64,000 bases of DNA from Octopus sinensis (GCF_006345805.1 NC_043021.1:10726001-10790000); one strand, 5' to 3'. Shown: positions 507 to 62,664, numbered from the stretch's first letter. Numbers and translations: made by a program. The notes: generated by a model not told the origin, from the sequence alone.

Positions 507-761
507 GTATGGGGATGTCTTGCTTATTGGATTTTGTCCCAAGTCTCTTTTGACATCGCAGTTGTTTGTGTACGTGAGTGAATGAGAGAATAGGCTTAAT
601 CTTCAGGCAATAGAGCAGGTGGACTTAGGCACCCAGGTGTTGTCAGATAATTGTGGTTTGACTGTATGGCTACTTCGTCCTTGGATGCTGCTTCATTTAT
701 TTTATGTCAGTCTTTTTGCATGCTAACATGGGCATAGATGAATGCATATTACAAAGCTTTT

Positions 762-22119: not shown

Positions 22120-22614
22120 TCTCTCTGCTAATTTTCAGATATGGTAATCAGAGCGAAATGAGACAGCTTCAGTTCCAACTTAAGAATAACGGTAACATTT
22201 TCATTTCCTTTATTGAAGTAGGAGGAATTGATCAACCACAACGAGGGAAGATGAAAGAAATTTTAAGTCTGCCCATGTGTGGTTACATTCTTGCTTGACA
22301 ATGATAATCTTCTCAAGTGACATTGCAATGGCAATCACAAAAACGTTCAGTGGAGACATCACTGCAATCTCCAGCAGTCAAGCATCTACCATTGACAAGG
22401 CCAAGGAAGGCTGAAATCACGTGATTTATCGCCTGCTAGCAATATAAACAAGTGTTTATATGCTCCAAAAGCCAATACGAGAGAGTTTCTCTCGTGGTAA
22501 TTATTGCAGTATCGTGTGTTCTAACACAACATCCACTTTTAAGTAGGGATAAATAATGCCTTTTGGTAATTAATACTGCTTTCGTTGCTAATAATTATTA
22601 TTTAATAAGCACAT

Positions 22615-22680
22615 CATCCATATACATACATCACATACATATATATACACATATATACATACATACATACATATACACAC

Positions 22681-22711
<31 letters not shown>

Positions 22712-23082
22712 TACACACACACATATACACACATATATATATACACATACATACATATATATATACATATACATACACATATATACATATATATACACAT
22801 ATATATACACATACATACATATATATATACACATATATACACATACATACATATATATATACACATATATACACATACATACATATATATATACATATAT
22901 ATACACATACATACATATATATATACACATACATACATATATATACATATATATATACACATACATACACATATATATACATACATACACACATACATAC
23001 ATACACACATACATATATACACACACATACATACATACACATATATACACACACACATACATACATACATATATATATATAT
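22615..23082. repeat. (TA/CA/TACA)n compound microsatellite
   Basis: Directly visible. Confidence 0.95.
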
Positions 23083-26000
23083 CTCACTTACTCTACAAAA
23101 AATATACCCATGCCATCAAATAAGCTCTACATGAAGCTGCTACTTGAAAAGGGACTGACAAGTTGCCTATACAGCCTAACCGTTTTATAGGTATGAAACC
23201 AATTAGTCACTCTCTGATCGGCCGTAACAATCAACCTTATATATAGATATATATATATATGTCTTAAGCAAGAGAAATTGAACTCCATAATTAAGACTGT
23301 AAAGTTACTTAAGAAATTTAAAAGCTTGAGAGTTTCTGTGTTAAACTTATCAAAAACGTGTTGGATTTGTTGTTTTTAGTTGAGATTATTTTTGTTAACG
23401 ATATCTTTGACTCCATTCAGCTTCTTGCTTGCCACTAAATGTTAAAACTTTGTCTCTAAACTTTATTTAGTCTCTCTTCTTCAAATGGCCTAATTGCATA
23501 CAAACCTGGCCATTTATTGTACAATGTACAGTAAAAAACAGTGAGAGAGAGCAGGAGGTAAGCACAGTTTTTTGCTGTTGTTGTTGTGGGGGGGGGTGAT
23601 GTATGTATTCCAATGAAAGGTTTTGTTGTTGTTGTTGTTGCTGTTTAATAACATGAAGAGAAATTCTGACGTTTGTTTACCAGAGTTCGAGTTTTATTAA
23701 CTGTTGCCCCTCCCCCCACCAATCCCACTTTTTTTTTTTTTTTTTTTTGCTGTGTTGCATCATCAATCACTTAACTGTATGTGTAATTTTCTCTCCACTG
23801 GAGTGAACAAACAAATGCAATTTTAGTCTGAATTTTGTGTCTCTAGTCTCAACATTCTGTGACATAGCAGAGGCAGTAATATTATTGGTACACATGGAAG
23901 GTAAATTCCTCTAACACACACACACACACACTATAGATTCTTTATTTTATTATTTTATTTTATTTTGGTAAAAATATAAAAAAATAATCCATGGTGGTGG
24001 ATTAAATCATTTCTCTCAATTTCCAAATCTGAGCAAATTTTGGTAATCTGTACATTTTTTTTTTTTTACTTTGGAATCCTAACAAATGTCACTAAATTAG
24101 AGTTGCTTGTCCCCTTTTCCCCTAAATACCACCATCTTAGTCATCAAAATATTGTGAGGGATTTTAATAAGATTATGTTGGCTGCTGTTAATATCTGCAA
24201 GTTGATGGGAAGTCACATATGCATTAATTATTATTATTATCATCACTCATTAACCTAAAAAAATTTTTTTTTTTTTTTTTGAAAAACTAGCCAACTGTGA
24301 AATCTAATAATCTGTCTCAAACTTTCACAATTCAAGGACATTTTCTGGGAAGAATTTTGTAGGTGGAAACTTTTGTTTTTGAATTCCCACCTTGCAGAGT
24401 AGAATGGCATTAACTAAAATGTTACTTCTGACCAATCTTTAAGAAAAAAAATATTAAAAAGAAAAAAAAGTTCCATTTTTTAAAAAAAATTTTTTTTTTT
24501 TTTTAAATGGGACCTTCATTTCAGCTCATCTAATAGAATTTTATTTTCTGGGAGAAAAAAAAAGAAAATATTTTTCAGCAAAACATTCAAACAGCTTTCA
24601 TTATTATCTCATCTGCTTATAGTCATTATTGTTCTTTTTAGTAAGACACAAATATCAAACCCCTTGCTTATTCCATTATAAATACAAGGGGAAAACTGAC
24701 TAGCATAATGTGTTTTCTACCTCAAATCTCCCTTACTGACTTCTTCTACACTCTTGTTCCCTTTCATAAAAAAAAAAAGATACCCAGGTCACAAGAGTCT
24801 TGACCCCTTCTCTCTCTCTCATTTGCTGCTAAATATATATATTTTTCGTCAACAATGACAGTTTTATTCTTTTGCATTGTTCTTTTTTTTTTAAAGCAAA
24901 CTGAAGCAAGAAAATCTGTAGGAAATATAAATAAAAAAATGTTCTTGGAACAATGTCTTGGATAATGAAACCCCCTTTTTTTTTTTTTGTTTGGAAAGAT
25001 GAGTTGCAATATTGGTGTGGGTTTGTTTGGAACAAAGTCTGTTGCTATCCTATTTGAAGAATTTTTTGTACGATATATGTATAATATATTTATATATATA
25101 TCTCTTAGAAATAATTCTAGCCCACATCTATTTGCTGGTCACATCTAAAGAAGTTTGTATATATAAAAATTTTAATTGAAAGTTATATAAAAAAAAAATA
25201 TCAAAAGTGAATAAAGTAATTTGACTGTATTACAGGTGTTCTTTGTTTTTTACTTTTCAAATCAAGCTTTGATTTACTGCATTTTTTTTAATCATGTTAA
25301 CCCATATATACCCCTAGTTTGAGTTTTTGCAATGCAAAACCTGCTCTTAGTTGTTTGGACATGAACTCGCTAGGAAACATCTGACAGAGCATATGAAATG
25401 TTCAGTAGATAGTCGACACCCGTAGCTAACAGTTGCATACTGTCCTTCTCTTCCAGATTATGAAAGCTTACTATAATGTTTAAACTAAATACAGTGAAAT
25501 TTTAAGACTTCAATTTTATACAGGTTAAAAAATACTATTTTTTTTATAAAATCGCTTTGAAAAATAGAGAGCTGACATGCAGGAAACTACATGTAAGTTT
25601 TGTATTCTGTAAACCTTTCCATGACTATTACAATTAATTTTTTAAAATAACCAAGAATTTGGGGAGAGATTTTGTTACATAAATAACTTTAATCATTATA
25701 AAATTTATATTTGGAACATAACTTGATAAAAAAAAAATGTTTTTTACTAAAAGAATAGAAGTTTAAATGTAGATATGAACATTTTAAAATGGAGAGTTTT
25801 GTATGCTAGAACCAGAGGCATTCTCAGATGGGTTGCAAACCATATATTGAAAGACACTGGACTGAAAGTAAAAGGTTATTGAAATCATATTAGTGTTAAC
25901 TATGAAAAAATGGTTTTTACCATATTGCTTTGAAAAAATTCTATTCCTTATGCAGCAAGAAACAGTGATATCCCCATTAACACTTTTTCACGTATTTCAT

Positions 26001-26090
26001 AAAATAGCTGTTTTACAGAGTAAGTATCAAATACATTTAGTATTGAACATGAAAACCATACTTACAGGATATGCTGAAAAAAGTATTGCT

Positions 26091-26669
26091 GGCACAGGAG
26101 TGGCTGTGTGGTAAGTAGCTTGCTTACCAACCACATGGTTCTGGGTTCAGTTCCACTGCATGGCACCTTGGGCAAGTGTCTTCTACTATAGCCTCAGGCT
26201 GACCAGTCTTGCATGTGGATTTGGTAGACGGAAACTGAAAGAAGCCTGTCGTATATATATATACACATATGTATGTGTATGTGTGTATGTATATATGTGT
26301 GTATGTATATATATGTGTATGTATGTGTATGTGTGTATGTATGTATGTGTATGTATGTATATGTATGTATGTGTATGTATGTGTGTGTATGTATGTATAT
26401 ATATGTATATATATATATATATGTGTATATAGATGTATGTATGTGTGTGTATGTATGTGTATGTATGTATGCATGTATGTGTAATATGTATATGTGTAAT
26501 ATGTATATGTGTAAATGTATGTGTGTGTATATATATATGTGTATATGTATGTGTATGTATGTATATATATTTATGTATGTGTATGTATGTATATATGTGT
26601 ATGTATGTATATATGTGTATGTATGTATATATGTGTATGTATGTATTATAGTATGTGTATGTATGTATG

Positions 26670-26700
<31 letters not shown>

Positions 26701-26850
26701 ATATATGTGTGTGTATATATATATGTGTGTATATGTATGTGTGTGTATATGTATGTGTGTGTATATGTATGTGTATGTATGTATATATATAATGTATGTG
26801 TATGTATGTATATATGTGTATGTATGTATATATATGTATGTGTATGTATG

Positions 26851-26883
<33 letters not shown>

Positions 26884-26974
26884 GTATATATGTGTGTATA
26901 TATATGTGGTGTATATATATGTGTGGTATATATATGTATGTGTATATATATATGTATGTATATATATATGTATG

Positions 26975-27027
<53 letters not shown>

Positions 27028-28407
27028 GTAATTGATATATATATGTATGTGTATATATATGTATATATGTGTATATAGATGTATGTATGTGTGTGTGTAT
27101 GCATATGTGTGTGTATGTATATATGTATGTATATAGATATGTATGTGTGTATGTATGTGTGTATGTATGTGTATATATGTATGTATGTGTGTGTATATAT
27201 ATGTGTGTATATGTATGTGTGTATATGTATGTGTATATATATGTATATATATATGCATGTATATGTGTGTATATATATGTGTATGTATGTATATGTCACG
27301 TGACCGACCAGTCCATCAGATGTAGTTACACATCGCTGGTCACAATGCCTTCGCATTGTTTTAGCCTTCGAATGACGCCACCCCGCTGGCTAAGCGAGCA
27401 GGCCATGTATGTATGTATGTATGTGTATATATGTATGTATGTATGTGTGTGTATGTATGTATATGTATGTATATATATGTGTATGTATGTATGTATATAT
27501 ATGTGTATGTATATATGTGTATGTATGTATATGTGTATGTATATATATGTGTATGTATATATATATGTGTATGTATGTATATATATATGTGTATGTATGT
27601 ATATATATATATGTGTATGTATGTATGTATATATATATGTATGTGTATGTATATATGTATATATATGTATGTATGTATATATATGTATATGTATGTATGT
27701 ATGTGTGTGTATGTATGTGTGTGTATGTATGTATATATATATGTATGTGTATATATATGTATATATATATATATGTGTGTATATAGATGTATGTATGTGT
27801 GTGTGTATGTATGTGTGTATGTGTATGTATATATGTATGTATGTATGTGTAATATGTATATATGTGTGTATATATATGTGGTATATATATGTGTGTGTAT
27901 ATATATATGTGTATATGTATGTGTGTATATGTATGTGTATATATATGTATAATATATGTGTATGTATGTATGTATATATATGTGTATGTATGCATGTATA
28001 TATATGTGTATGTATGTATGTATATATGTATGTGTATGTATGTATATATGTATGTGTATGTATGTATATATGTATGTGTATGTATATATGTATGTGTATG
28101 TATGTATATATATATGTATATGTATGTATGTATGTATATATGTATGTGTATGTATGTATATATATATGTGTATGTATGTATATATATATGTGTATGTATA
28201 TGTATGTGTATGTATGTATGTATATGTATATGTATGTATGTATGTATATATATATGTGTATGTATGTATATATGTATGTATATATGTATGTATATATATG
28301 TATATATGTATGTATGTATGTGTATGTATATATATATATATGTATGTATATGTATGATATATGTATGTATGTATATATGTATGTATATATGTATGTATAT
28401 ATGTATG

Positions 28408-28438
<31 letters not shown>

Positions 28439-30266
28439 ATGTATGTATGTATATGTGTGTGTGTATATATGTGTGTTATATATATGTGTGTATATATATG
28501 TGTGTTATATATGTGTGTATATATATGTATGTATATATATATATGTGTATGTATGTATGTATATATATATGTATGTGTGTATGTATATATGTATATATAT
28601 GTATGTATGTATATATATGTATATGTATGTATGTATGTGTGTGTATGTATGTGTGTGTATGTATGTATATATATATGTATGTGTATATATATGTATATAT
28701 ATATATATGTGTGTATATAGATGTATGTATGTGTGTGTGTATGTATGTGTGTATGTATGTGTGTATGTGTATGTATATATGTATGTATGTATGTGTAATA
28801 TGTATATATGTGTGTATATATATGTGTGTATATGTATGTGTGTGTATATATATATGTGTATATGTATGTGTGTATATGTATGTGTATATATATGTATATT
28901 ATGTGTATGTATGTATGTATATATATGTGTATGTATGCATGTATATATATATGTGTATGTATGTATATATGTATGTGTATGTATGTATATATGTATTGTA
29001 TGTATGTGTATATATGTATGTGTATGTATATGTATGTGTATGTATGTATATATATATGTATATGTATGTATGTATGTATATATGTATGTGTATGTATGTA
29101 TATATATATGTGTATGTATGTATATATATATGTGTATGTATATGTATGTATGTATGTATATGTATATGTAGTATGTATGTATATATATATGTGTATGTAT
29201 GTATATATGTATGTATAATATATGTGTATGTATATATGTATGTATGTATGTGTATGTATATATATATATATGTATGTATATATGTAGTATGTATGTATGT
29301 ATGTATGTATGTATGTATATATGTATGTATATATGTATGTATATATGTATGTATATATGTATGTATGTATATGTATGTATGTATGTATGTATGTATATGT
29401 ATGTGTGTATATATATGTGTGTATATATATGTGTGTATATATAGTGTGTATAATTATGTGTGTATATATGTGTGTATAATATGTATGTATATATATGTAT
29501 ATATATGTATGTGTATATATGTATGTGTATATATGTATGTAATGTATATATATGTATATATATATGTGTATATAGATGTATGTATGTGTGTGTGTATGTA
29601 TGTATGTGTGTATGTGTATATGTATGTATGTATATATGTATGTGTATATGTGTGTATGTATATGTATATGTGTGTATGTATATATGTATGTATATAGATA
29701 TGTATGTATGTATGTGTATGTATGTATGCATGTATGTGTAATATGTATATGTATGTATGTGTGTGTATATATATGTGTGTATATGTATGTGTGTATATGT
29801 ATGTGTATATATATGTATATATATATGCATGTATATGTGTGTATATATATATGTGTATGTACGTATATGTCACGTGACCGACCAGTCCATCAGATGTAGT
29901 TACACATCGCTGGTCACATGCCTTTGCATTGTTTTAGCCTTCGAATGACGCCACCCCGCTGGCTAAGCGAGCAGGCCATGTATGTATGTGTATATATATG
30001 TATGTATGTATGTATATGTGTATATATGTATGTATGTATGTGTGTGTATGTATGTATATGTATGTATATATATGTGTGTGTGTGTATGTATATGTATGTA
30101 TGTATGTATATATATATGTATGTATATATATGTGTGTATGTATATATATGTGTGTATGTATATATATATGTATGTGTATGTATGTTATATGTGTATGTAT
30201 GTATATATGTGTATGTATGTATATATGTGTATGTATGTATATAATATGTATGTGTATGTATGTATG

Positions 30267-30297
<31 letters not shown>

Positions 30298-30448
30298 ATA
30301 TATATGTGTGTGTATATATATATGTGTGTATATGTATGTGTGTGTATATGTATGTGTGTATATGTATGTGTATGTATGTATATATATATATGTATGTGTA
30401 TGTATGTATATATGTGTATGTATGTATATATATGTATGTGTATGTATG

Positions 30449-30481
<33 letters not shown>

Positions 30482-30574
30482 GTATATATATGTGTGTATA
30501 TATATGTGTGTGTATATATATGTGTGTGTATATATATGTATGTGTATATATATGTATGTATATATATATGTATG

Positions 30575-30627
<53 letters not shown>

Positions 30628-33600
30628 GTAATTGTATATATATGTATGTGTATATATATGTATATATGTGTATATAGATGTATGTATGTGTGTGTGTATG
30701 CATATGTGTGTGTATGTATATATGTATGTATATAGATATGTATGTGTGTATGTATGTATGCATGTATGTGTAATATGTATGTATGTGTGTGTATATATAT
30801 GTGTGTATATGTATGTGTGTATATGTATGTGTATATATATGTATATATATATGCATGTATATGTGTGTATATATATGTGTATGTTGTATATGTCACGTGA
30901 CCGACCAGTCCATCAGATGTAGTTACACATCGCTGGTCACAATGCCTTCGCATTGTTTTAGCCTTCGAATGACGCCACCCCGCTGGCTAAGCGAGCAGGC
31001 CATGTATGTATGTATGTATGTGTATATATGTATGTATGTATGGTGTGTATGTATGTTGTATGTATGTATATATATGTGTATGTATGTATGTATATATATG
31101 TGTATGTATATATGTGTGATGTATGTATATGTGTATGTAGATATATGTGTATGTATATATATATGTGTATGTATGTATATAATATGTGTATGTATGTATA
31201 TATATATATGTGTATGTATGTATGTATATATATATTATGTGTATGTATATATGTTATATATGTATGTATGTATATATGTATATGTATGTATGTATGTGTG
31301 TGTATGTATGTGTGTGTATGTATGTATATATATATGTATGTGTATATATGTATATATATATATATGTGTGGTATATATATGTATGTGTGTGTGTATGTAT
31401 GTGTGTATGTGTATTATATATGTATGTATGTATGTGTAATATGTATATATGTGTGTATATATATGTGTGTATATGTATGTGTGTGTATATATATATGTGT
31501 ATATGTATGTGTGTATATGTATGTGTATATATATGTATATATATGTGTATGTATGTATGTATATATATGTGTATGTATGCATGTATATATATATGTGTAT
31601 GTATGTATATATGTATGTGTATGTATGTATATATGTATGTGTATGTATGTATATATGTATGTGTATGTATGTATATATGTATGTGTATGTATGTATATAT
31701 ATATGTATATGTATGTATGTATGTATATATGTATGTGTATGTATGTATAATATATGTGTATGTATGTATATATATATGTATATGTATTGTATGTATGTAT
31801 GTTATATGTATGTATGTTATATGTATGTATGTATGTATATATATATGTGTATGTATGTATATATGTATGTATATATGTATGTATATATATGTATATATGT
31901 ATGTATGTATGTGTATGATATATATATATATGTATGATATATGTATGTATATATGTATGTATGTATATATGTATGTATATATGTATGTATATATGTATGT
32001 ATATATGTATGTATGTATATGTATGTATGTATATGTATGTATGTATATGTATGTGTGTATATATATGTGTGTATATATATGTGTGTTATATATATGTGTA
32101 TATATATGTGTGTATATATATGTATGTATATATATATGTGTATGTATGTATGTATATATATATGTATGTGTATGTATATATTATATATATGTATGTATGT
32201 ATATATATGTATATGTATGTATGTATGTGTGTGTATGTATGTGTGTGTATGTATGTATATATATATGTATGTATATATATGTATAATATATATATGTGTG
32301 TATATAGATGTATGTATGTGTGTGTATGTATGTGTGTATGTATGTGTGTATGTGTATGTATATATGTATGTATGTATGTGTAATATGTATATATGTGTGT
32401 ATATATATGTGTGTATATGTATGTGTGTGTATATATATGTGTATATGTATGTGTGTATATGTATGTGTATATATATGTATATATATATGTATGTATATAT
32501 GTAGTATGTATATGTATATATGTATGTATGTGTATATGTATATATGTGTATGTATGTATGTATGTGTATGATGTATGTATGTATGTAGTATATATGTATG
32601 TGTGTATGTATGTATATTATGTGTATGTATGTAATATGTATGTATGTAGTGTATATGTATGTATGTATGTGTATGTATGTATATATATATGTGTATGTAT
32701 GTATATATATATGTGTATGTATATGTATGTATGTATGTATATGTATATGTATGTATGTATGTATATATATATTGTGTATGTATGTATATATGTATGTATA
32801 TATGTATGTATGTATATATGTATGTATGTATGTGTATGTATATATATATATATGTATGTATATATGTATGTATATATGTATGTATGTATATATGTATGTA
32901 TATATGTATGTATATATGTATGTATATATGTATGTATGTATATGTATGTATGTATATGTATGTATGTATATGTATGTGTGTATATATATGTGTGTATATA
33001 TATGTGTGTATATATATGTGTGTATATATATGTGTGTATATATGTGTGTATATATATGTATGTATATATATGTATATATATGTATGTGTATATATATGTA
33101 TGTGTATATATATGTAATTGTATATATATGTATATATATATGTGTATATAGATGTATGTATGTGTGTGTGTATGTATGTATGTGTGTATGTGTATATGTA
33201 TGTATGTATATATGTATGTGTATATGTGTGTATGTATATGTATATGTGTGTATGTATATATGTATGTATATAGATATGTATGTATGTATGTGTATGTATG
33301 TATGTATGCCTGTATGTGTATATGTATATGTATGTATGTTTGTGTATATATATGTGTGTATATGTATGTGTGTATAGTGTGTGTATATATATATCTATGT
33401 ATGTATGTATGTATGTGTGTGATATATATATGTGTAGTACGTATATGTCACGTGACCGACCAGTCCATCAGATGTAGTTACACATCGCTGGTCACATGCC
33501 TTTGCATTGTTTTAGCCTTCGAATGACGCCACCCCGCTGGCTAAGCGAGCAGGCCATGTATGTATGTGTATATATATGTATGTATGTATGTATATGTGTA

Positions 33601-34120
33601 TATATGTATGTATGTATGTGTGTGTATGTATGTATATGTATGTATATATATGTGTGTGTGTGTATGTATATGTATGTATGTATGTATATATATATGTATG
33701 TATATATGTGTGTATGTATATATATGTGTGTATGTATATATATATGTATGTGTATGTATGTATATATATATATACACACATATATGTATGTATACTGCTT
33801 CTGTGCAGGGATAGGTATGTATATATATATATATATACACATATATATATACACATATATATATATATACACACATATATATACGTATGTGTGTGTGTAT
33901 ATGTTTGTATGTCTGTGTTTGTCCCCCGTTTGGGCAAGTGTGTGGATTTGGTAGAGGGAAACTGAAAGAAGTGTTTACGTCCCAGTAACTTAGCGGTTTG
34001 GCAAGAGACTGATAAATTAAATACTAGGCTTACAAAGAATAAGTCCTGAGGTCGATTTGGTCGACTAAAGGTGGTGCTCCAGCATGGCCAGAGTCAAATG
34101 ACTGAAACAAGTAAAAGAGA
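26091..34120 (+). mobile_element. Family B SINE stretched by a 7.65-kb internal array
   Basis: Head at 26091-26250 and tail at 33911-34120, in the same order and orientation as the 18786-19137 copy. Confidence 0.75.
26251..33910. repeat. Compound (TA/TG/TATG)n microsatellite array with four ~109-bp islands
   Basis: Islands at 27296-27404, 29870-29977, 30893-31001 and 33448-33555. Confidence 0.97.
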
Positions 34121-34741: not shown

Positions 34742-34828
34742 TCAGCTCCTTCGGTCTCTGTTCTCTTTCTTCGCAATTACCAGTTGGATGAACTTGATTT
34801 TGTGGCCTTCATGCTCAAACGTAGTAGT
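34742..34828 (-). CDS. Candidate terminal coding exon of the EGF-repeat receptor
   Basis: Strong acceptor tttctttctttcttttttgtag. The phase-0 reading gives TTTFEHEGHKIKFIQLVIAKKENRDRRS*. It is the best acceptor I found downstream of the YxxM exon, but it has no homology support. Confidence 0.55.
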   Translation of the reverse strand, partial: TTTFEHEGHKIKFIQLVIAKKENRDRRS

Positions 34829-37757: not shown

Positions 37758-39046
37758 TAGATGATATTAGCTTCAAGGAACACCCGTTAAGATATAACCC
37801 TCACCTTAGACACCTTAGGAACTTTATTCAGTCAACCCGGTGCAAACATGGAATCCTAGTACCAGCAGATTAAAACGGGTAATATGTATAGAGTTGATTA
37901 CGATATTTATAGCAAATTAATTAGGAAGGAACTAAACTCCAAATATAAAATTACGACTAAGAACAACTTGAAAAAAGTAACATGGAAATGAAAGAGATCA
38001 TGGAGAAACTAAATTTAACGGATAGAACGGAGCCACTAAAACCGTGTGAGCCCAGGATCAACCTTAAAGACCACAAAAAGAACTTCTTGGAAAACCCTTC
38101 GGTAAGGCTGATCTGTCCAACTAAGTCGGACATTGGCCGACTTAGTAAATCTATCCTGGATAGTGTTCTACCCCAAATAACCCCTCTCTCCCCTTAAACT
38201 ATGGCTAAGTACGGATGAAGTTCAAATGGTTAACTCTCTAACTAATACTAGTAGTCTGTCCTTTATTCAGTTCGATATTAATAGTTATTACTCAAGTATT
38301 TCCCCTATCTTACTCAACAAATCACTAATATTTGCCATGAATCGCTCCCTCATATCTAGAGAAGAAATCAATATTGTGCTACTAGCTAGGAAGACATTTA
38401 TAGAATTTGAAGATAAATTATGGACTAGAGCAGATACACCTAATTTTTTGATATACCAATGGGTTCCAGTGATTCGGCTGAGGTAACCAACCTAGTGGGC
38501 ACATATCTATTAAAATGCATAAGCAAGGATATACCAGAAATACAGTGGGGTCTATATAGGGATGATGCTCTGTTTGTTATCCCTAGTAATAATAAATCTG
38601 TTATAGAAAGGATTAGAAAGAAAATTAATAAGTTCTTTAAGGATTTCAACCGCGGTATAACGTATGAACCGGGCACTAAAATAGTTAACTTCCTAGATAT
38701 TATGCTAGACCTTAACTCCAAGCTACATTACCCATTTAGAAAGGAAGGCGAAATCACGAATTACGTAAATAAATTATCAAATCATCCCCCAAATATAATA
38801 GAATCTTTAGTAAGAAATATTTCATTAAGAATTTCAAAATTATCATCCAATAAGGATATATTTAACTCCCATTCTGAGCATTATAATGAGGCGTTAACTA
38901 AGGCTGGATACAACCAAAAGATTACATTCGTTGATAAGGGGAACTCACGTATTCCTAATAATGAAGTTATCAGTAATCACATAAGCAGCAATACAGACCA
39001 AGCCCGAAATAAAAGTAGAATTAAATTAATGGTAACGCTAATCTAG
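37758..39046 (+). pseudogene. PLE reverse transcriptase, broken by stops and frameshifts
   Basis: Motifs across frames: VPAD/KTGNMY, LKDHKKNFLENPSVRLICPTKSDIG, FIQFDINSYYSSIS, MGSSDSAEV, GLYRDD (YRDD at 38555-38566), VNFLDIMLDL, NYVNKLSNHPPNII. Confidence 0.88.
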
Positions 39047-39895
39047 CGTACAGGCCCAACAATTCAAATAGAAGCATTGACCAGAACATAGGTAACTCGG
39101 ATAATATTGAAGTAGATAAACCTAAGATGCACACAAATAAAAATAAAAATAATGGTAATAAATACAATAACTCCGGTGAGATGAATAGTAGTAATTCTAC
39201 GAACCCTAAATTAATAAAAGATATATTATGGCTGAATATCCCTTTCAACTGTGCGATACAATCGGATATACAGAACAAATTCAAAGTAATTCTGGAAAAA
39301 AATTCCCTATCTCTCATAGATATCATAGAATTATATCTAGGAAAACAGTTAGGATTTCTTATTCAACCCTCCCAAATATGTCCACTTTAATAGCTAGATT
39401 AATAATAAAAACATTAAACTAGCCAGGAAAGATAGAAATAAAAATAATAATATCAGCATGAATACCAATAGCAATTATAATAATACTACCAACAATAAAA
39501 ACAACAATAGTAACTATCAAAACATAGGTGAAATTAGTAACCACAGAATGACTAATAACATTAACATTAATAGTAATAATAAATGCCGATATTAATAGAA
39601 GTAATAATGTTAATAATAGAAATAATAGATATAAAGCTAATGGAAAACAAGGAGAATGAAAATATCAGTGATATTATAACAGCAATATGCAGTCGGATAA
39701 AGACTAACAATAATAGTAACATTACCAATAATAAGAAATCATGGTAGGACTTTAAACCTAAATGATGAAGCTGAAGGATCAATAAATAATAGCAATACTT
39801 TAGATATCAGCACCAACTATAGAAATGATAATCAAAATAATAGGAACCTAAGACATCTACCCAAGAATAATCCAAAGCCTGAAGTTGCTCCTCCT

Positions 39896-40320
39896 GTGTG
39901 TAAGTGTAGAATAAAATCAAAATGCCCGGCACCTGGTCTATGTGGGGAAAATAATGTAATCTATAAATGTACCATATCCACGGAGAATAACAAATATCTT
40001 TACGTTGGATGTACAATTAATTTTCTAGCCAGAGTTAGAAATCACATCTCGTCTTTTAAATTACGTCATAAAGCTGGTACCACCACACTTTCAAACAAAA
40101 TCTGGGAACTCAAAAATAATAATAAAAATATAAACCTTAATTGGGAATAGTTAGGAGAGCAATTCCGTATAAAAATAGTAGGGTTGGTTGCCAACTATGC
40201 TCCATGGAGACGTATGAAATTCTAAAGCATAGAAAACATAGTAACTTATTGAATAATCATATCGAACTAGGTCAAGTTTGTGTCCAAGCTAAATTGAAGA
40301 CTTTAAAATATTTTAAATGA
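39896..40320 (+). pseudogene. PLE C-terminal GIY-YIG endonuclease with Cys motif
   Basis: CKCRIKSKCPAPGLCGENNVIYKC...YVGCT...RVRNH...TTLSNKIWELK. After a stop/frameshift near 40150 it continues PYKNSRVGCQLCSMETYEIL...LLN...to TGA at 40320. Confidence 0.85.
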
Positions 40321-43488: not shown

Positions 43489-43746
43489 TTAAACCATATC
43501 CTTCTATCTTTCTGTTTCATATCACTTTGCTACAATACCGGGAAACCACTGGATACCTAAGTGATGTATATAATAGTAATGATATGGTGCAGGCAGGGCG
43601 GCAGTTGAGTATTAACTGAATAGATAAAGTCTGATAGTGACTATAAGGCCTTGAAGGGATGTGGAACAGACATATTTCTGACCACAGATCTGCTGGAATA
43701 AAGTATGATCAACAGTTAAATTACAATAAGTGCAACAACTTCTTAC

Positions 43747-44189
43747 CTGTGATTCATTAGTCATTACTTCATAATCTTGTTTACCTTCATTAGTCATCTC
43801 TTCATATTGTTGTTGATCTCCGTCGGTCATCACCTCATAGTCTTGTTTACTTCCATTAGTCATCTCTTCACATTGTTGTTTACCTCCGTTAGTCATCACC
43901 TCATATTCTTGTTTACCTCCATTAGTCATCGCTTCATATTGTTGTTTATCTTCGTTAGCCATCTCTTCACATTGTTGTTCACTTTCATTAGCCATCACCT
44001 CATAATCTTGTTTATCTATGTTAGTCGTCTCTTGTTGTTTACCTCTGTCAGTCATCACCTCATATCGTTGTTTAACTTGAACGCTTTTAACGACAGGACT
44101 GCGTGGTGGTTGTGGTAACTTTTCCAACTCCATCTCATCATATGTCCAACTCGATTCGCTTCCGCAAATAAATGATTCGTAATTGTCAT
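43747..44189 (-). CDS. EGF-repeat receptor, cytoplasmic exon with tandem YxxM repeats
   Basis: tcaacag|...CAG|gtaaga, 443 nt, phase 1 to 0, open throughout. DDNYESF...WTYDEMELEKLPQPPRSP...then ten 11-aa repeats of type KQDYEVMTNES. Confidence 0.85.
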
Positions 44190-44513
44190 CTGTTGAATTA
44201 CAGAAATAAACAAACACAAGTAAAGTACTGCACTATATCAGATGTAGTCAAAAAGCATCAGGCCTTTGACCAAAAAACAGGTAATATTAAAAAACTCACC
44301 ATTTTGATTTAGTCTTGTTCAAAGTATTCACCTTAGGAGTCCACACACTTCTTATTTATTTCTTTATTGCCCACAAGGGGCTAAACAAGGACAGACAAAG
44401 GGATTAAGTTGATTACATTGATCTCAATGCATAACTGGTACTTAATTTAACTGCCTTGCCAAAGAACAAGTTGTAACTATGCAGCAGTTTATTATATACG
44501 GAGTATATATAGT

Positions 44514-44900
44514 GAGTGGAGGCGCAATGGCCCAGTGGTTAGGGCAGCAGACTCGCGGTCATAGGATCGCAGTTTCGATTCCCAGACCGGGCGTTGTGAG
44601 TGTTTATTGAGCGAAAACACCTAAAAAAGCTCCACGACGCTCCGGCAGGGGATGGTGGTGATCCCTGCTGTACTCTTTCACCACAACTTTCTCTCGCTCT
44701 TACTTCCTGTTTCTGTTGTACCTGTATTTCAAAGGGCCGGCCTTGTCACTCTCTGTGTCACGCTGAATATCCCCGAGAACTACGTTAAGGGTACACGTGT
44801 CTGTGGAGTGCTCAGCCACTTGCACGTTAATATCACGAGCAAGCTGTTCCGTTGATCGTATCAGCCAGGACCCTCATCGTCGCAACCGACGGAGTGCTCC
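44514..44900 (+). mobile_element. tRNA-derived SINE, family C; left member of an inverted pair
   Basis: Head ggcgcaatggcccagtggttagggcagc...gtttcgattccc. Near reverse complement of 45238-45620. Confidence 0.88.
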
Positions 44901-45237: not shown

Positions 45238-45620
45238 AGCACTCCGTCTGTTATGACAACGAGGGTTTCGGTTGATCCGAATCAACGGAACAGCCTGCTC
45301 GTGAAATTAACGTGTAAGTGGCTGAGCACTCCACAGACACGTGTACCCTTAACGTAGTTCTCGGGGATATTCAGCGTGACACAGAGAGTGACAAGGCCAG
45401 CCCTTTGAAATACAGGTACAACAGAAACAGGAAGTAAGATTGAGAGAAAGTTGTGGTGAAAGAGTACAGCAGGGATCACCACCATCCCCTGCCGGAGCCT
45501 CGAGGAGCTTTAGGTGTTTTCGCTCAATAAACACTCACAACGCCCGGTCTGGGTATCGAAACCGCGATCCTATGACTGCGAGTCTGCTGCCCTAACCACT
45601 GGGCCATTGCGCCTCCACTC
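45238..45620 (-). mobile_element. tRNA-derived SINE, family C; right member of the inverted pair
   Basis: Full-length inverted copy of 44514-44900 with scattered substitutions. Confidence 0.88.
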
Positions 45621-46372
45621 CAGACTTGTACCCCGGAGGAGAACCTCTTCGGTGAACCTATGGTCATTCGTGACCGATGGAATCGAGTTAGTATATATGT
45701 ATTGTTATATATATTTCATCGTTTACTTGTTTAGTCTTTTGACTGCGGTCATGGTGGGGCCTTGGAGGATTTTAGTCAAACGAAGCGATCTCAGGACTCA
45801 TTTTTTTCTTAAAGCTGGTACTTATTCTATCAGTCTCTTTTGCTGAACTGCTAAACTATAGGGACATAAACACACCAACACCAGTTGTCAAGTAGTGGTA
45901 GGGGAGAGACACAAGCAAAAACACACGCACACACAGAGCAAGCTTCTTTCAGTTTCTGCCCACTAAATCCACTCACAAGGATTTGGTTGGCTTGTGGCTA
46001 TAGTAAAAGACACCAGCCCAAGGTATCACGCAGTGGGACTGAACCTGGAACCATGACGTTGAGAAGCAAACTTTTTTATCACTTTATAGTGTTTTGTTAT
46101 GTGTGTGATACCCTGGTCTGTGAAAAACAACTGCCTTGCTCAAAACTGGTCCATGGGGCAAAAAAAGGTCGGGGCCCTGCTGCTATACACCACCACAACC
46201 ACACTAACATCACAATCATCATCAAAGGCATCATTGCAGCTCCCCACCCCATCCTCTGGCCATAATCTGATATTCAACCTTTGACATGACCCAGTTTACC
46301 TGCCATTATGATCTTAACATCAAGCAATTTAGTAGTTGTAATGAACGGAAACTCTAACACTGTGCTACATAC

Positions 46373-46488
46373 CTGTATCTGTGGTGACTCTAATAACAGG
46401 GGGTGCTGGTACTGTAGGAGGTAAAGGCAGGTCCAATGGGAGAGGAAACATCTTTTCCATGTTGAAAGTTCTTTTGGCCGCAGAGATC
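46373..46488 (-). CDS. EGF-repeat receptor, Pro-rich juxtamembrane cytoplasmic exon
   Basis: ttctacag|...|gtatgt, 116 nt, phase 2 to 1, which bridges the TM exon and the YxxM exon exactly. ISAAKRTFNMEKMFPLPLDLPLPPTVPAPPVIRVTTDT. Confidence 0.8.
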
Positions 46489-48172: not shown

Positions 48173-48254
48173 TTGCAGCAAACTATAATTGTTATAACAA
48201 TGACCAACAGAATGAAAAAGGCCACAACAGGAACACCAACCAGCAACAATAAAT
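48173..48254 (-). CDS. EGF-repeat receptor, transmembrane exon
   Basis: Long pyrimidine tract ttttcttcttctccag|...|gtaagt, 82 nt, phase 1 to 2. (N)LLLLVGVPVVAFFILLVIVITIIVCC(K). Not in the ORF track. Confidence 0.88.
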
Positions 48255-49250: not shown

Positions 49251-50812
49251 ATTTAACAGAATAATCTGAATGCTAAAAGGTTAAACAGTGAAAAAATTAA
49301 GGAAATGAAAAATGTTAAGTCCTTACTAGGTTTCTCTTCTTGGCAGTTATCTCCTCGGTAACCATGTTCACATCCGTTTTCACAGGTTCCATTCTTATAA
49401 TCACAGACTACACCATCGAGACAATGGCATTTCAGGGAACACTGGGAACCAAATTTTCCATCTGGACATTCTGTATAAGAAACAACAATTCTTTGGAGTG
49501 AAACAACCGTTGGATATTTTTTTTTTTTTTTTTACTAGTTTCAGTCATATGACAGTGCCCATGCTGGGGCACCACCTTGAAATTTTAGTTGAATGTATTG
49601 ACCCCCAGAACTTATTTTTTACTTTTAAAGCCTGGTACTTACTCTATTGGTCTCTTTTGCTGAACCACTAGGTTAAAGGGATGTAAACACACCAGTACCA
49701 GTTGTTGGGGATAAACAAAGACACACTACCAAATCCATTCACAAGGCTTTGGTCAACCTGGAGCTATAGTAGAAGACACTTGCCCAAGGTGCCACACAGT
49801 GAGACTGAACCCAGAACCATGTGGTTGGAAAGCAAGCTTCTTACCACACAGCTGTGTTGTGGAAGAATCAACCATATGTTATTGTAAGAATCTGCTAGCA
49901 GTGAGTTGGACTGTACTGCACAACTACAGTACCTACACACATCAAGGTGGACTGTGCCATCCACTTGCTTTCACAGGTAGTAAGGATGTTTCATCTACCT
50001 ATAGTACATATCTGCTAGTAGATAAATTATACCATGTGCTGATCCACAGCCGCTCACACATCAAGGTGAACTGCCTTTTCCCCAGTCACAGTTAGTTATC
50101 CTAGTGTGCCTAGGATATACCACCACACTAATATGACAGAATAGTGTCATCTAGCAAGGATATCATGCAGCAATGACATGTACTGAAAATACAACACAGT
50201 CATGATATCTAGGTCTACTGAGGAAAATATATAGTTCATAGATGAGATCAAGATATTCTCCATATAGAATACACTTGGTTTAAATCAAGAGATTTAAATT
50301 TGAGTAGATATAGAAATAAATGTAGGGAAAAGCGATTTAGACAGATCAATATATAAAGTATATTAAAAACTGTATATATATGTATACTCTTTTACTCGTT
50401 TCAATCATTTGACTGCGGCCATGCTGGAGCACCACCTTAGGTCGAGCAAATCGATCCCAGGACTTATTCTTTGTAAGCCTAGTACTTATTCTATCAGTCT
50501 CTTAACCGCTAGTTACGGGGATGTAAACACACCAGCATCGGTTGTCAAGCGATGTAGGTGGGGGAAAACACAAAGACACACAAACATACATATATATACA
50601 TATATACAAGGGGCTTCTTTTCAGTTTCTGTCTACCAAATCCACTCACAAGGCTTTGGTCGGCCCGAGGCTATAGTAGAAGACACTTGCCCACGGTGCCA
50701 TGCAGTATATGCACAAAATACAAATGATATAAAGAATTACAGGTGTTGAAGTATTACAAAAGGATTACTACAGGAGGAAAATGTGATGATGATAAAGAGT
50801 AATGTGACTTAC

Positions 50813-50950
50813 TTTTCTGACAGTCAGGGCCTTCAAACCCAGTATCACACATGGTTTGTGGACAATGGCCATCGATGAAATGACAGCTGTCACCTTCCAG
50901 GCAATGACATATCTGCTGACATAACTTACCAAATGTACCAGGAAGACAAG
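50813..50950 (-). CDS. EGF-repeat receptor, module exon 7 (membrane-proximal)
   Basis: tcttag|...|gtaagt, 138 nt, phase 1-1. CLPGTFGKLCQQICHCLEGDSCHFIDGHCPQTMCDTGFEGPDCQK. Confidence 0.9.
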
Positions 50951-53284: not shown

Positions 53285-53422
53285 CTGTTTGGCAATCAGG
53301 TCCTGTATAACCTGGCTTGCAGACATCATTCTCGCATAAACCAGTTTCTCTGTTGCAGAGGGTGTCATTTTCGCAATGACATGTGCCATTACAGAGCACT
53401 CCAAAGGTACCATTGGTGCAAG
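53285..53422 (-). CDS. EGF-repeat receptor, module exon 6
   Basis: tgtcag|...|gtttgt, 138 nt, phase 1-1. CTNGTFGVLCNGTCHCENDTLCNRETGLCENDVCKPGYTGPDCQT. Confidence 0.9.
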
Positions 53423-53990: not shown

Positions 53991-54128
53991 CTTGCTGGCA
54001 GTCTGTTCCTTGAAAACCTGATGGGCAACTGTTGTCAGGACAAGCACCTGTTAGCCTATCACAGACTGTGTTGTTGACACAATTACAATGGTGGTGACAA
54101 TTAGCTCCAAACTTCCAAGGTTCACATT
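53991..54128 (-). CDS. EGF-repeat receptor, module exon 5
   Basis: tgtcag|...|gtaaca, 138 nt, phase 1-1. CEPWKFGANCHHHCNCVNNTVCDRLTGACPDNSCPSGFQGTDCQQ. Confidence 0.9.
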
Positions 54129-54682: not shown

Positions 54683-55310
54683 CAGGGTGCAGTGAATAAA
54701 CAGTCTAAATTATGCAAAAATGAAAATAACACTGATATCTCATTTTAACAGATATATTTACCAAAATTACATTAAAATATCTTGAAATACTAAAGAGTAA
54801 ATTTATTCAATAAAATTGCCATTGGCTTCAACCACAACCTCCAGACGACTTCAGAATCTCCTGCAGCTCTTCTGGAGGGTCTTCTTGTTTAAGTTGGTGA
54901 ATGCTACCATAATCCTTGCCTTAAATTCATCTTGGATGTTACAAGAAGTTTTGTTGGTCGCTTGCTCAACTGCACCCCACACATAATAATCAAGGGTATT
55001 GCAGTGTGGGGAGTTAGGTGGCCAGATGTTAGGGGTGATGTGGTCGCAGAAATTGTCTGACAGCCATGACTGGGTTCCCCTGCCTGTGTGGCATGGTGCA
55101 GAGTCCTGTTGCCAGACATAGGATGTTCCAGCAGCCATCCTGTTGACTCAGGGCAGCACTTCCTCCTCCAGGCACTTGATGTAGGCCTCCATGTTGAGTT
55201 TGAGGTCTCAGGCCATGTGGGAAGATGAATGGAGGCATAACGTCACCATTACTAGTAATCACTCAAAACACCATGTTGACGGAATGTTTAATTTTTATCA
55301 CTCTTGGTAC
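54683..55310 (-). mobile_element. Tc1/mariner DD37D (maT-type) transposon remnant
   Basis: WQQDSAPCH...WPPNSPHCNTLDYYVWG, with 37 residues counted between the two Asp. TA + cagggtg terminus at 54681-54689. Confidence 0.85.
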
Positions 55311-57762: not shown

Positions 57763-57900
57763 CTTTTTGACAGTCGTTACCTTCATAACCAGGAGCACAT
57801 CCTTCACCTGAACACATGCCAGATTGAGGGTTGCATTTACTATTATCAGCACAGTGACAAGTGTGGTTACACTCAGGGCCATACGTATTGTTCTTGCAAG
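57763..57900 (-). CDS. EGF-repeat receptor, module exon 4
   Basis: ttgaag|...|gtcagt, 138 nt, phase 1-1. CKNNTYGPECNHTCHCADNSKCNPQSGMCSGEGCAPGYEGNDCQK. Confidence 0.88.
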
Positions 57901-59174: not shown

Positions 59175-59318
59175 CTGATTGACAGTCTGGTCCAATGAAG
59201 CCAGCTTCACACTGGCCATGGCCACCATCACAGAATCCATTTGTCCTGTTGCACTGTGTGACATTCTTGCAGTGACATTTTCCTTCACAGTTCACTCCAA
59301 ACTGACCCTCTCCACACA
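59175..59318 (-). CDS. EGF-repeat receptor, module exon 3
   Basis: ttgcag|...|gtaagt, 144 nt, phase 1-1. CGEGQFGVNCEGKCHCKNVTQCNRTNGFCDGGHGQCEAGFIGPDCQS. Confidence 0.9.
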
Positions 59319-61034: not shown

Positions 61035-61172
61035 CTTTCTGGCAGTTTTCCCCATGGTACCCTGGTGCACATCCAACAGCCGAACAAAACCCAGATTCAG
61101 GGTCACATTGGTTATTATCGATGCAGTGGCACTGGTGTTTGCAATTTGGACCAAACTGACCCTTCTTGCATA
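61035..61172 (-). CDS. EGF-repeat receptor, module exon 2
   Basis: tttcag|...|gtcagc, 138 nt, phase 1-1. CKKGQFGPNCKHQCHCIDNNQCDPESGFCSAVGCAPGYHGENCQK. This frame is not in the ORF track. Confidence 0.9.
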
Positions 61173-62526: not shown

Positions 62527-62664
62527 CTTTCTGACAAGTAGACCCAGTGTAACCATCTTGGCAAATGCCATCATAACACGAACCGTATATCTGATTACAC
62601 TGGGATATATTCTTGCAACGACATTGTTCGTGGCAGTTAAGACCAAACGTTCCAGCTGTACACA
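62527..62664 (-). CDS. EGF-repeat receptor (MEGF10/CED-1/Draper/PEAR1-like), 8-Cys module exon 1 in window
   Basis: tttcag|...|gtgagt, 138 nt, phase 1-1. CTAGTFGLNCHEQCRCKNISQCNQIYGSCYDGICQDGYTGSTCQK. Confidence 0.9.

What the first reader, a model, noticed from the sequence alone, without database searches (positions are those of the whole stretch)
43750..44073. EGF-repeat receptor tail built from a tandem array of YxxM docking motifs
Seen: one exon carries ten 33-nt units: KQRYEVMTDRG / KQQ--ETTNID / KQDYEVMANES / EQQCEEMANED / KQQYEAMTNGG / KQEYEVMTNGG / KQQCEEMTNGS / KQDYEVMTDGD / QQQYEEMTNEG / KQDYEVMTNES. These give 7 YxxM, plus an upstream YDEM (8 total). The frame is preserved even by the one 6-nt deletion. 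V-type and E-type units roughly alternate, suggesting a 66-nt ancestral duplication. Established: pYxxM is the binding consensus for PI3K p85 SH2 domains, and pYEEx suits Src-family SH2 domains. Known Draper/MEGF10/PEAR1 tails carry only a few tyrosine motifs (ITAM-like, NPxY, YxxM). Inference: this is a lineage-specific multivalent PI3K-recruiting scaffold on a putative engulfment/immune receptor, where repeat number could tune signal strength. I know of no description of it.
Basis: partly seen in the sequence, partly recalled or inferred. Interest (0 to 1): 0.8.

Follow-up and report, generated by a model that had tools for sequence, protein, structure and literature searches.

The report
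EGF-repeat receptor tail with tandem YExM motifs
A gene for a membrane receptor with many EGF-like domains has a cytoplasmic tail in which an 11-amino-acid unit carrying a tyrosine motif (Y-E-x-M) has been duplicated ten times, most likely making a multi-site docking platform for PI3-kinase-type signalling proteins; this is an unusual but not fundamentally new design.

Summary
On the minus strand, exon 43747-44189 has AG/GT flanks. It carries ten in-frame 33-nt units (44073-43750), giving 7 Y-E-x-M motifs plus an upstream YDEM. The exon joins in frame to a juxtamembrane exon, a transmembrane exon and eight single-domain, phase-1 EGF exons. The product is a type I MEGF/PEAR1-like receptor whose N-terminus lies outside the window.

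No protein with this tail was found in 1.84 billion representatives. The one meaningful hit is the tail of an unrelated Dok/FRS-type docking protein. It repeats almost the same extended motif ([KE]Q-x-Y-E-x-M-T-N-G), interleaved with YxxP and YxN sites. This supports reading the motif as a phosphotyrosine docking site, with the PI3K p85 SH2 as the best candidate. PEAR1 relatives carry a single SSY[VM]EM.

Several points weaken the case:
- There is no expression or phosphorylation evidence.
- Tyr is not retained better than a neutral simulation predicts (7 of 10 against 6.6).
- YEVM is also the CD63 AP-2/AP-3 sorting signal.

Verdict: a real feature and a new variant of a known kind, of moderate interest.

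The parts
62527..62664 (-). EGF exon 1 in the window (8-Cys MEGF-type module, phase 1-1, AG/GT). The gene continues 5' beyond the window.
   Evidence: tblastn hits from MEGF/PEAR1-like proteins
61035..61172 (-). EGF exon 2 (phase 1-1)
59175..59318 (-). EGF exon 3 (phase 1-1)
57763..57900 (-). EGF exon 4 (phase 1-1)
53991..54128 (-). EGF exon 5 (phase 1-1)
53285..53422 (-). EGF exon 6 (phase 1-1)
50813..50950 (-). EGF exon 7 (phase 1-1)
49327..49470 (-). EGF exon 8, the membrane-proximal module, ending ...CQEEKP
48173..48254 (-). Transmembrane exon: N-LLLLVGVPVVAFFILLVIVITIIVCC-K
   Evidence: AG/GT flanks, in phase with EGF exon 8
46373..46488 (-). Juxtamembrane exon: ISAAKRTFNMEKMFPLPLDLPLPPTVPAPPVIRVTTDT (basic stop-transfer segment, then proline-rich)
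44074..44189 (-). Non-repeated first part of the tail exon: DDNYESFICGSESSWTYDEMELEKLPQPPRSPVVKSVQV. It contains YESF, YDEM and PQPPRSP.
43750..44073 (-). Ten-unit 33-nt (11-aa) tandem array, consensus KQQYEVMTNGG. It has 7 Y-E-x-M units, 2 C-E-E-M units and 1 unit with a 6-nt deletion.
43747..43749 (-). Last codon of the tail exon (CAG, Gln), followed by the donor GTAAGA
34745..34828 (-). It has a strong polypyrimidine/AG acceptor and is in frame, but it is unverified.
   Evidence: no homologue and no nearby AATAAA/ATTAAA found

Best explanation
The array is the coding, cytoplasmic, probably disordered tail of a type I MEGF/PEAR1-like multi-EGF receptor. An 11-residue short linear motif, K-Q-x-Y-E-x-M-T-N-G-x, was amplified by tandem (partly 66-nt) duplication.

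Inferred mechanism:
1. Ligand-driven clustering of the receptor allows a cytoplasmic tyrosine kinase to act. The kinase is Src-family or Syk-type, and may dock on the proline-rich juxtamembrane segment.
2. The kinase phosphorylates up to eight Y-[ED]-x-M tyrosines.
3. The resulting pY-E-x-M sites recruit SH2 proteins. The regulatory subunit of class IA PI3K is the best candidate.
4. Neighbouring sites lie 11 residues apart, the same spacing as PDGFR-beta Y740/Y751 (my own knowledge). One p85 could therefore engage two sites with its two SH2 domains, or several effectors could be concentrated on one receptor.
5. This would give a strong local PIP3/Akt/actin signal.

What is shown: the sequence, the gene model, the motif array, and the same motif in a Dok/FRS-type docking protein. 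What is inferred: phosphorylation, the identity of the SH2 partner, and the cellular role (engulfment or adhesion).
For: - The gene model is internally consistent. All 11 exons have AG/GT boundaries and their phases fit. Each of the eight EGF modules keeps all eight Cys. The TM helix is followed by basic residues.
- The ectodomain hits MEGF11, PEAR1, draper-like and SCARF-like proteins at 30-38% identity, and Pfam EGF_STAB1-2.
- The frame is kept through a 6-nt deletion. There is no in-frame stop despite 48 substitutions relative to the consensus (P=0.055 under random substitution).
- Within the five V-type units, the only two changes in the YEVM core are synonymous.
- An exhaustive HMMER search of 1.84 billion representatives gave one non-trivial hit, P0027 (E=2e-4). 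It repeats [KE]Q[QH]YE[TIM]MTNG seven times, interleaved with SLYDTPR (YxxP) and a YENV site. The motifs are conserved in its 74%-identical orthologue P0028.
- The upstream exons of P0027 encode an IRS-type PTB domain (PF02174, 31.5 bits, above the gathering score of 22). The closest solved structures are DOK1 and FRS3. P0027 is therefore a tyrosine-kinase substrate and docking protein.
- BLASTP of the tail against P0027 aligns only at these motifs (E=2e-12).
- PEAR1 relatives keep one SSY[VM]EM. [quoted passage not shown]
- Adding a p85-recruitment segment to a phagocytic chimeric receptor triples whole-cell engulfment (PMC6008046).
Against: - There is no transcript, protein or phosphorylation evidence.
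- No orthologue or paralogue with this tail was found, so conservation cannot be measured.
- Differences between units show no third-codon-position excess (112/117/95).
- Tyr is retained in 7 of 10 units against 6.6 expected under neutral substitution. Two units have Cys and one has lost the motif.
- The YxxM consensus is short. It is also compatible with other SH2 domains (Shc, Fes, Src family) and with YxxPhi sorting.
- The tail lacks the NPxY and ITAM motifs used by Draper/CED-1/MEGF10.
- The conserved K-Q at -3/-2 and T-N-G at +4 to +6 are not explained by p85 SH2 specificity.
Confidence: 0.5

Rival explanations
1. The Y-E-x-M units act unphosphorylated as a multivalent array of YxxPhi sorting signals. 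They would bind the mu subunits of AP-2/AP-3 and drive rapid endocytosis or lysosomal delivery of a scavenger-type receptor. This may coexist with SH2 docking as a phospho-switch, as in CTLA-4.
For: - YEVM is the same four residues as the CD63 lysosomal/endocytic signal GYEVM, which binds AP-3 and AP-2 (PMC3003310).
- CTLA-4 YVKM binds AP-1/AP-2 when unphosphorylated and PI3K/SHP-2 when phosphorylated (PMC4255484).
- Multi-EGF receptors of this kind include endocytic scavenger receptors, shown by the stabilin-type EGF Pfam hit and SCARF-like hits.
Against: - The same extended motif is repeated in a soluble Dok/FRS-type docking protein with no TM segment. A membrane-cargo sorting signal makes little sense there.
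- Sorting signals are normally single and lie close to the membrane or at the C-terminus (my own knowledge).
- The conserved flanks (KQ, TNG) are not features of YxxPhi signals.
Confidence: 0.2
2. The array is a coding minisatellite drifting in a disordered tail. One ancestral YxxM (as in PEAR1) was copied by replication slippage or unequal crossing-over. Copy number has no tuned function, and some or most units are functionally redundant or silent.
For: - There is no third-position excess in differences between units.
- Tyr retention equals the neutral expectation, and 3 of 10 units have lost the Tyr.
- No homologous tail was found elsewhere.
- The support from stop-codon avoidance is only marginal (P=0.055).
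Against: - Units differ by 3-12 of 33 nt, so the array is not very recent, yet the frame, the Met (9 of 10 against 6.2 expected) and the K-Q/E/T-N positions are kept.
- The extended motif matches that of an independent docking protein, where it is conserved between orthologues.
Confidence: 0.17
3. The repeat is not translated as modelled. It could be an intronic or UTR minisatellite, a skipped exon, or part of a decaying gene.
For: - Open frames in tandem repeats are not independent evidence. The plus strand is also open across the array.
- The exact ORF is not on record in the assembly collection.
- No canonical polyA signal was found near either candidate 3' end.
Against: - The acceptor and donor are strong. 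The phase is exactly compatible with the TM and juxtamembrane exons.
- The non-repeated 116-nt 5' part of the exon is open in the same frame and carries another YDEM.
- All eight EGF modules are intact.
Confidence: 0.08
4. The 11-residue period reflects a structural helix: an amphipathic lipid-binding 11-mer, a hendecad coiled coil, or a charged single helix acting as a spacer.
For: - Single-sequence AlphaFold2 draws long helices over the array, at low confidence (mean pLDDT 58.8, array blocks 62-74).
- The top HMMER hit, P0019, is an E/Q/K-rich 11/22-mer helical repeat protein.
Against: - The hydrophobic moment is low (about 0.24) and mean hydrophobicity is -0.36.
- There are only two or three hydrophobic residues per unit, and G-G or N-G in most units.
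- The net charge is strongly negative (27 acidic against 10 basic), so i/i+4 salt-bridge stabilisation is absent.
- The P0019 similarity is compositional.
Confidence: 0.05

Closest known systems
PEAR1 / MEGF12 / Jedi-1 (also MEGF10, MEGF11, Draper, CED-1)
   Same: Type I receptor with a run of 8-Cys MEGF-type EGF modules and one TM helix. The tail uses tyrosine motifs. [quoted passage not shown]
   Different: - PEAR1 has one YxxM plus NPxY. Here there are eight Y-[ED]-x-M, made by a tandem 11-aa repeat, and no NPxY or ITAM/YxxL.
- The EMI domain cannot be checked because the N-terminus is outside the window.
- Ectodomain identity is only 30-38%.
Multi-YxxM docking platforms: ErbB3, IRS-1/2, Gab1/2, CD19, BCAP (my own knowledge for the motif counts)
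   Same: Several YxxM sites on one polypeptide recruit class IA PI3K through the p85 SH2 domains. Y-E-x-M variants occur in ErbB3 and CD19.
   Different: Those sites are dispersed, non-repetitive and individually conserved. Here they are near-identical tandem units on a non-kinase EGF-repeat receptor.
Dok/FRS-type docking protein P0027/P0028 (unnamed, from eukaryotic contigs in ENA metagenome assemblies)
   Same: Repeats nearly the same extended motif, [KE]Q-x-Y-E-x-M-T-N-G, seven or more times. It even includes degenerate copies that have lost the Tyr.
   Different: - It is a soluble adaptor with an IRS-type PTB domain.
- Its motifs are spaced about 25-30 residues apart and alternate with SLYDTPR (YxxP).
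- It shares no DNA similarity with the window, and its organism is unknown.
p130Cas substrate domain and CagA EPIYA repeats (my own knowledge)
   Same: A tandemly repeated tyrosine motif forms a multivalent SH2-docking region. In CagA, copy number modulates signal strength.
   Different: The motifs differ (YxxP and EPIYA), the partners differ (Crk/Nck, SHP-2/Csk), and neither sits on an EGF-repeat receptor.
Synthetic CAR-P 'tandem' receptor (PMC6008046)
   Same: A phagocytic receptor tail equipped with a p85-recruiting YxxM segment. This increased whole-cell engulfment about threefold.
   Different: It is engineered, uses one CD19 segment fused to the FcR-gamma ITAM, and is not natural.
CD63 GYEVM and CTLA-4 YVKM YxxPhi signals
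   Same: The same four-residue core (YEVM), or the same dual use of a YxxM, for AP-2/AP-3 binding.
   Different: These are single motifs at defined positions, not a ten-unit array.

Membership tests
MEGF10/MEGF11/PEAR1/Draper/CED-1 receptors | Multiple 8-Cys MEGF/laminin-type EGF modules in the ectodomain | tested here: met
   There are eight modules, each on its own phase-1 exon with all eight Cys. Best database hits are MEGF11, PEAR1 and draper-like proteins. Pfam EGF_STAB1-2 scores 62 bits.
MEGF10/MEGF11/PEAR1/Draper/CED-1 receptors | N-terminal EMI domain and signal peptide | not testable with these tools
   The 5' end of the gene lies beyond position 64000. No further exon was found between 62665 and 64000.
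MEGF10/MEGF11/PEAR1/Draper/CED-1 receptors | Single-pass type I topology | tested here: met
   A 26-residue hydrophobic segment is followed by K-ISAAKR, with the EGF modules on the N-terminal side.
MEGF10/MEGF11/PEAR1/Draper/CED-1 receptors | Cytoplasmic NPxY (binding site for the GULP/CED-6 PTB domain) | tested here: not met
   The modelled tail has no NPxY. PEAR1 relatives and a mayfly relative do have ENPY.
MEGF10/MEGF11/PEAR1/Draper/CED-1 receptors | ITAM-like or YxxL/I motif (Syk/Shark binding) | tested here: not met
   There is no YxxL/I. The only Tyr outside a YxxM context is in NYESF.
MEGF10/MEGF11/PEAR1/Draper/CED-1 receptors | PEAR1-type YxxM p85 site | tested here: met
   There are eight Y-[ED]-x-M here, against a single SSY[VM]EM in P0002 and P0007. 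Binding itself was not tested.
Class IA PI3K docking sites (pYxxM) | Y-[M/V/I/E]-x-M sequence in a disordered cytoplasmic region | tested here: met
   The motifs are YEVM x5, YEAM, YEEM and YDEM. AlphaFold2 predicts no confident fold (mean pLDDT 58.8).
Class IA PI3K docking sites (pYxxM) | Tyrosine phosphorylation and p85 SH2 binding | not testable with these tools
   This needs phosphoproteomics and binding assays.
YxxPhi adaptor-protein sorting signals | Y-x-x-bulky hydrophobic residue in the cytoplasmic tail of a membrane protein | tested here: met
   YEVM is identical to the core of CD63 GYEVM.
YxxPhi adaptor-protein sorting signals | A single signal at a characteristic distance from the membrane or at the C-terminus | tested here: inconclusive
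   The motifs lie about 55-180 residues after the TM segment, in ten tandem units, and the true C-terminus is unknown.
SCARF/SREC scavenger receptors | Long Ser/Pro-rich cytoplasmic tail after the EGF repeats | tested here: not met
   The tail is rich in E, Q, K, M, T and N, with only a short proline-rich stretch.
Mollusc EGF-repeat receptor-type tyrosine phosphatases (such as P0003, P0004) | Cytoplasmic PTP domain (PF00102) | tested here: not met
   tblastn of P0003 and P0004 hits only the EGF exons. No PTP exon is present anywhere in the window.

The most novel reading that the evidence does not exclude
This would be a natural multivalent PI3K-recruiting receptor. A lineage-specific MEGF-like receptor would have a signalling gain set by the copy number of a tandem K-Q-x-Y-E-x-M-T-N-G unit, and 11-residue spacing would let the two SH2 domains of p85 bind adjacent units. 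In addition, the extended motif is shared with a Dok/FRS-type adaptor. It could therefore define a previously unrecognised, conserved invertebrate SH2-ligand class, whose flanking K-Q and T-N-G residues are read by a specific kinase or reader.
Probability: 0.25. Interest if true: 0.6.

Novelty: new variant of a known kind. Interest (0 to 1): 0.4.

Why it matters
If the tail is expressed and phosphorylated, it shows how tandem duplication of a short linear motif can turn a one-site receptor tail (as in PEAR1) into a high-valency PI3K platform. Synthetic biology reached the same design deliberately for phagocytic chimeric receptors.

It would also provide:
- a natural system for asking how motif copy number and spacing set signal strength;
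- a candidate extended motif for invertebrate SH2 signalling;
- a possible copy-number-variable immune or adhesion receptor in a mollusc.

None of this addresses a long-standing open problem, and the parts (MEGF receptors, YxxM docking, coding repeats) are all known.

Tried and rejected
1. Word-indexed search of 5.8 billion proteins with TM plus tail found nothing at E<=0.01.
2. The same search with the full model found only 30-38% identical MEGF-like proteins. None has a similar tail.
3. Exhaustive HMMER search of 1.84 billion representatives with the tail exon gave nine hits. Eight are unrelated low-complexity repeats (P0019-P0026). Only P0027 is meaningful.
4. Exact look-up of the 201-aa genomic ORF in public assemblies found no record.
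5. A JGI metagenome scan for two Y-E-x-M-[TA]-[ND] codon strings 33 nt apart found only three copies of an unrelated high-GC gene (LVYEQMTDEV x2).
6. blastn and tblastx of the P0027 loci against the window gave no hits, so P0027 is not from a close relative.
7. I looked for a PTP domain or other cytoplasmic exons downstream, prompted by EGF+PTP mollusc proteins. There are none in the window.
8. The amphipathic 11-mer or coiled-coil idea was rejected on hydrophobic moment and composition. AlphaFold2 gave only low-confidence helices.
9. I considered an A-to-I editing footprint. A<->G changes make up 24 of 48 unit differences, but the sense strand is 70% purine, so this is uninformative.
10. Literature searches for YxxM arrays on MEGF-like or mollusc/cephalopod receptors found no description.
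11. Searches for a polyA signal after either candidate 3' end found none within about 1 kb.

Full report
**Observation.** I read the reverse complement of 43600-44300. It shows an exon bounded by ...ttcaacag|ATGACAATT at 44189 and TCACAG|gtaaga at 43747. In one frame it reads DNYESFICGSESSWTYDEMELEKLPQPPRSPVVKSVQV, followed by ten units:
- KQRYEVMTDRG
- KQQETTNID
- KQDYEVMANES
- EQQCEEMANED
- KQQYEAMTNGG
- KQEYEVMTNGG
- KQQCEEMTNGS
- KQDYEVMTDGD
- QQQYEEMTNEG
- KQDYEVMTNES

Seven units carry Y-E-x-M, and an eighth YxxM (YDEM) lies upstream. Units 4 and 7 have TGT (Cys) instead of TAT. Unit 2 is 27 nt long and has lost both Tyr and Met. Tandem Repeats Finder reports periods of 33, 66 (best score) and 99. 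Units two apart are slightly more alike than neighbours (6.4 against 7.7 differences). The array is unique in the window.

**Gene model.** The minus strand carries eight exons of 138-144 nt. Each encodes one complete 8-Cys MEGF-type EGF module. Each starts 2 nt before the first Cys and ends in phase 1, and all have AG/GT boundaries. The last EGF exon (49327-49470) joins in phase to exon 48173-48254. That exon encodes N-LLLLVGVPVVAFFILLVIVITIIVCC-K, a transmembrane helix. Next comes exon 46373-46488, which is basic and then proline-rich, and then the tail exon.

The third junction (43747/34828) has a good acceptor and an in-frame 28-codon ORF, but nothing else supports it. No polyA signal was found near it. 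The 5' end of the gene is outside the window. The full model hits MEGF11, PEAR1, draper-like and SCARF-like proteins at 30-38% identity, mostly from molluscs, and Pfam EGF_STAB1-2. Some mollusc relatives join the same kind of ectodomain to a tyrosine-phosphatase domain (P0003, P0004). No such exon exists in the window.

**Is the array under coding or motif constraint?** Units differ from one another by 3-12 of 33 nt, so the array is not brand new.
- Differences are spread evenly over codon positions (112/117/95).
- I simulated the observed 48 substitutions placed at random on the consensus. An open frame survives in only 5.5% of trials.
- In that simulation Met is kept more often than expected (9 against 6.2). 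Tyr is not (7 against 6.6).
- Within the five YEVM units, the only two core changes are synonymous.

Internal evidence for selection is therefore modest. For the tyrosine itself there is none.

**Relatives of the tail.** The following searches found no protein or locus with this tail:
- a word-indexed search of 5.8 billion proteins;
- an exact look-up of the genomic ORF;
- a metagenome DNA scan for 33-nt-spaced motif pairs.

The exhaustive HMMER search of 1.84 billion representatives returned eight compositional repeat matches and one informative protein, P0027 (E=2e-4). P0027 repeats AEQPYETMTNG, AEQQYETMTNS, DEQHYEIMTNG, DQQYEIMTNG, KQHYEMMANG, KQHYEMMTNS and KQHYQMMSNG. These alternate with SSSRPGSLYDTPRSA (a YxxP motif), and the protein also carries YYENV (a YxN motif). 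The motifs are conserved in its 74%-identical orthologue P0028. BLASTP of the window tail against P0027 aligns only at these motifs (E=2e-12).

P0027 lies on a eukaryotic contig in an ENA metagenome assembly. I spliced its two upstream exons at their AG/GT sites. The product matches the IRS-type PTB domain above Pfam's gathering score (31.5 against 22 bits). Its closest solved structures are the PTB domains of DOK1 and FRS3. So an unrelated, soluble, Dok/FRS-type tyrosine-kinase substrate uses essentially the same extended motif, [KE]Q-x-Y-E-x-M-T-N-G, next to classical SH2-binding motifs. This is the strongest evidence available here that the unit is a phosphotyrosine docking motif rather than an accident of repetition. 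The P0027 contigs share no DNA similarity with the window.

**Comparison with family tails.**
- Fish and seal PEAR1 carry ENPY plus one SSYMEM or SSYVEM.
- Mollusc and insect relatives carry one to three YxxL/I, YxN or NPxY motifs.
- None has an array.
- The window tail lacks NPxY and YxxL/I.

[quoted passage not shown] In engineered phagocytic receptors, adding the p85-recruiting part of CD19 tripled whole-cell engulfment (PMC6008046).

**Most likely mechanism (inferred).**
1. Receptor clustering allows a cytoplasmic tyrosine kinase to phosphorylate the Y-[ED]-x-M sites.
2. The phosphorylated sites recruit SH2 proteins, with class IA PI3K p85 the best fit to Y-[E]-x-M.
3. Adjacent sites 11 residues apart could engage both SH2 domains of one p85, as at PDGFR-beta Y740/Y751 (my own knowledge).
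4. The proline-rich segments (PLPLDLPLPPTVPAPPV, PQPPRSP) could dock an SH3-containing kinase.

I put this at about 0.5.

**Rivals.**
1. YEVM is also the core of the CD63 AP-2/AP-3 sorting signal (PMC3003310). CTLA-4 YVKM serves both AP-2 and PI3K depending on phosphorylation (PMC4255484). An endocytic or dual role is therefore plausible (0.2). However, the occurrence of the motif in a soluble adaptor argues for the phosphotyrosine reading.
2. The array may be a largely neutral coding minisatellite (0.17).
3. The exon may not be translated as modelled (0.08).
4. It may be a structural 11-mer helix (0.05). This is disfavoured by a low hydrophobic moment, Gly pairs and net charge. AlphaFold2 gives only low-confidence helices.

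**Novelty and score.** Literature searches found no description of a MEGF-like receptor with a tandem YxxM array. All the ingredients are known, and the combination is a new variant. The cephalopod origin, the engulfment role and expression remain untested. Interest: 0.4.

Noticed in passing
window 44499-44856 and 45281-45635: There is a large inverted repeat (arms of about 358 nt, 92-97% complementary, loop of 424 nt) inside the intron just upstream of the tail exon in transcript order. It looks like two copies of one interspersed element in opposite orientation (ORF fragments VFIERKHLK...CHAEYPRELR on both strands). It could form a long double-stranded RNA in the pre-mRNA.
   Followed up: partly
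window ~22500-33950: About 11 kb of degenerate TA/TG-rich simple repeat (GC 0.23-0.27, GC skew up to +0.84). It translates as YIYIHT.../CMYVCV... in all frames. It lies downstream of the receptor gene model.
   Followed up: no
window 37982-40150 (+): ORFs of a retroelement sit in the intron after the tail exon. The last ORF matches the GIY-YIG nuclease domain (22.5 bits, just below the 22.6-bit cutoff). This suggests a Penelope-like element.
   Followed up: partly
window 6564-6815 (-) and 54851-55138 (-): These are mariner/Tc1-type transposase fragments. The first hits Pfam Transposase_1 at 35 bits. The second had no Pfam hit and resembles one only by eye.
   Followed up: partly
window 183-581 (+): An exon-like ORF has an acidic stretch followed by an ankyrin-repeat-like sequence (weak Ank_2 hit at 18 bits, below cutoff). 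It probably belongs to a different gene on the other strand.
   Followed up: partly
L001 7989-11317 (+) and L002 (ENA metagenome eukaryotic contigs): This is an unnamed Dok/FRS-type docking protein (IRS-type PTB domain). Its tail alternates [KE]QxYExMTNG with SSSRPGSLYDTPRSA repeats. ORFs with Death domains follow directly downstream (12126-12509 and 13113-13391). The organism is unknown.
   Followed up: partly
P0003 (Acanthosepion pharaonis), P0004 (Mactra antiquata): Mollusc proteins join the same MEGF-type EGF ectodomain to a cytoplasmic tyrosine-phosphatase domain (PF00102). This ectodomain is therefore combined with different tyrosine-signalling tails in molluscs.
   Followed up: no
window 44014-44040 (unit 2); P0027 residues ~205-215 and ~255-262: Both the window array and P0027 contain degenerate units that lost the x-Y-E part through a short in-frame deletion (KQQ--ETTNID here, KQE---MTNG and KQ----TTNG in P0027). 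This hints at similar slippage-prone repeat dynamics.
   Followed up: no
window 43849-43881 and 43948-43980 (units 7 and 4): Two E-type units carry TGT (Cys) where the others have TAT (Tyr). They lie 99 nt apart, matching the 99-nt period that TRF also reports, so this may be one mutation copied by a three-unit duplication.
   Followed up: partly
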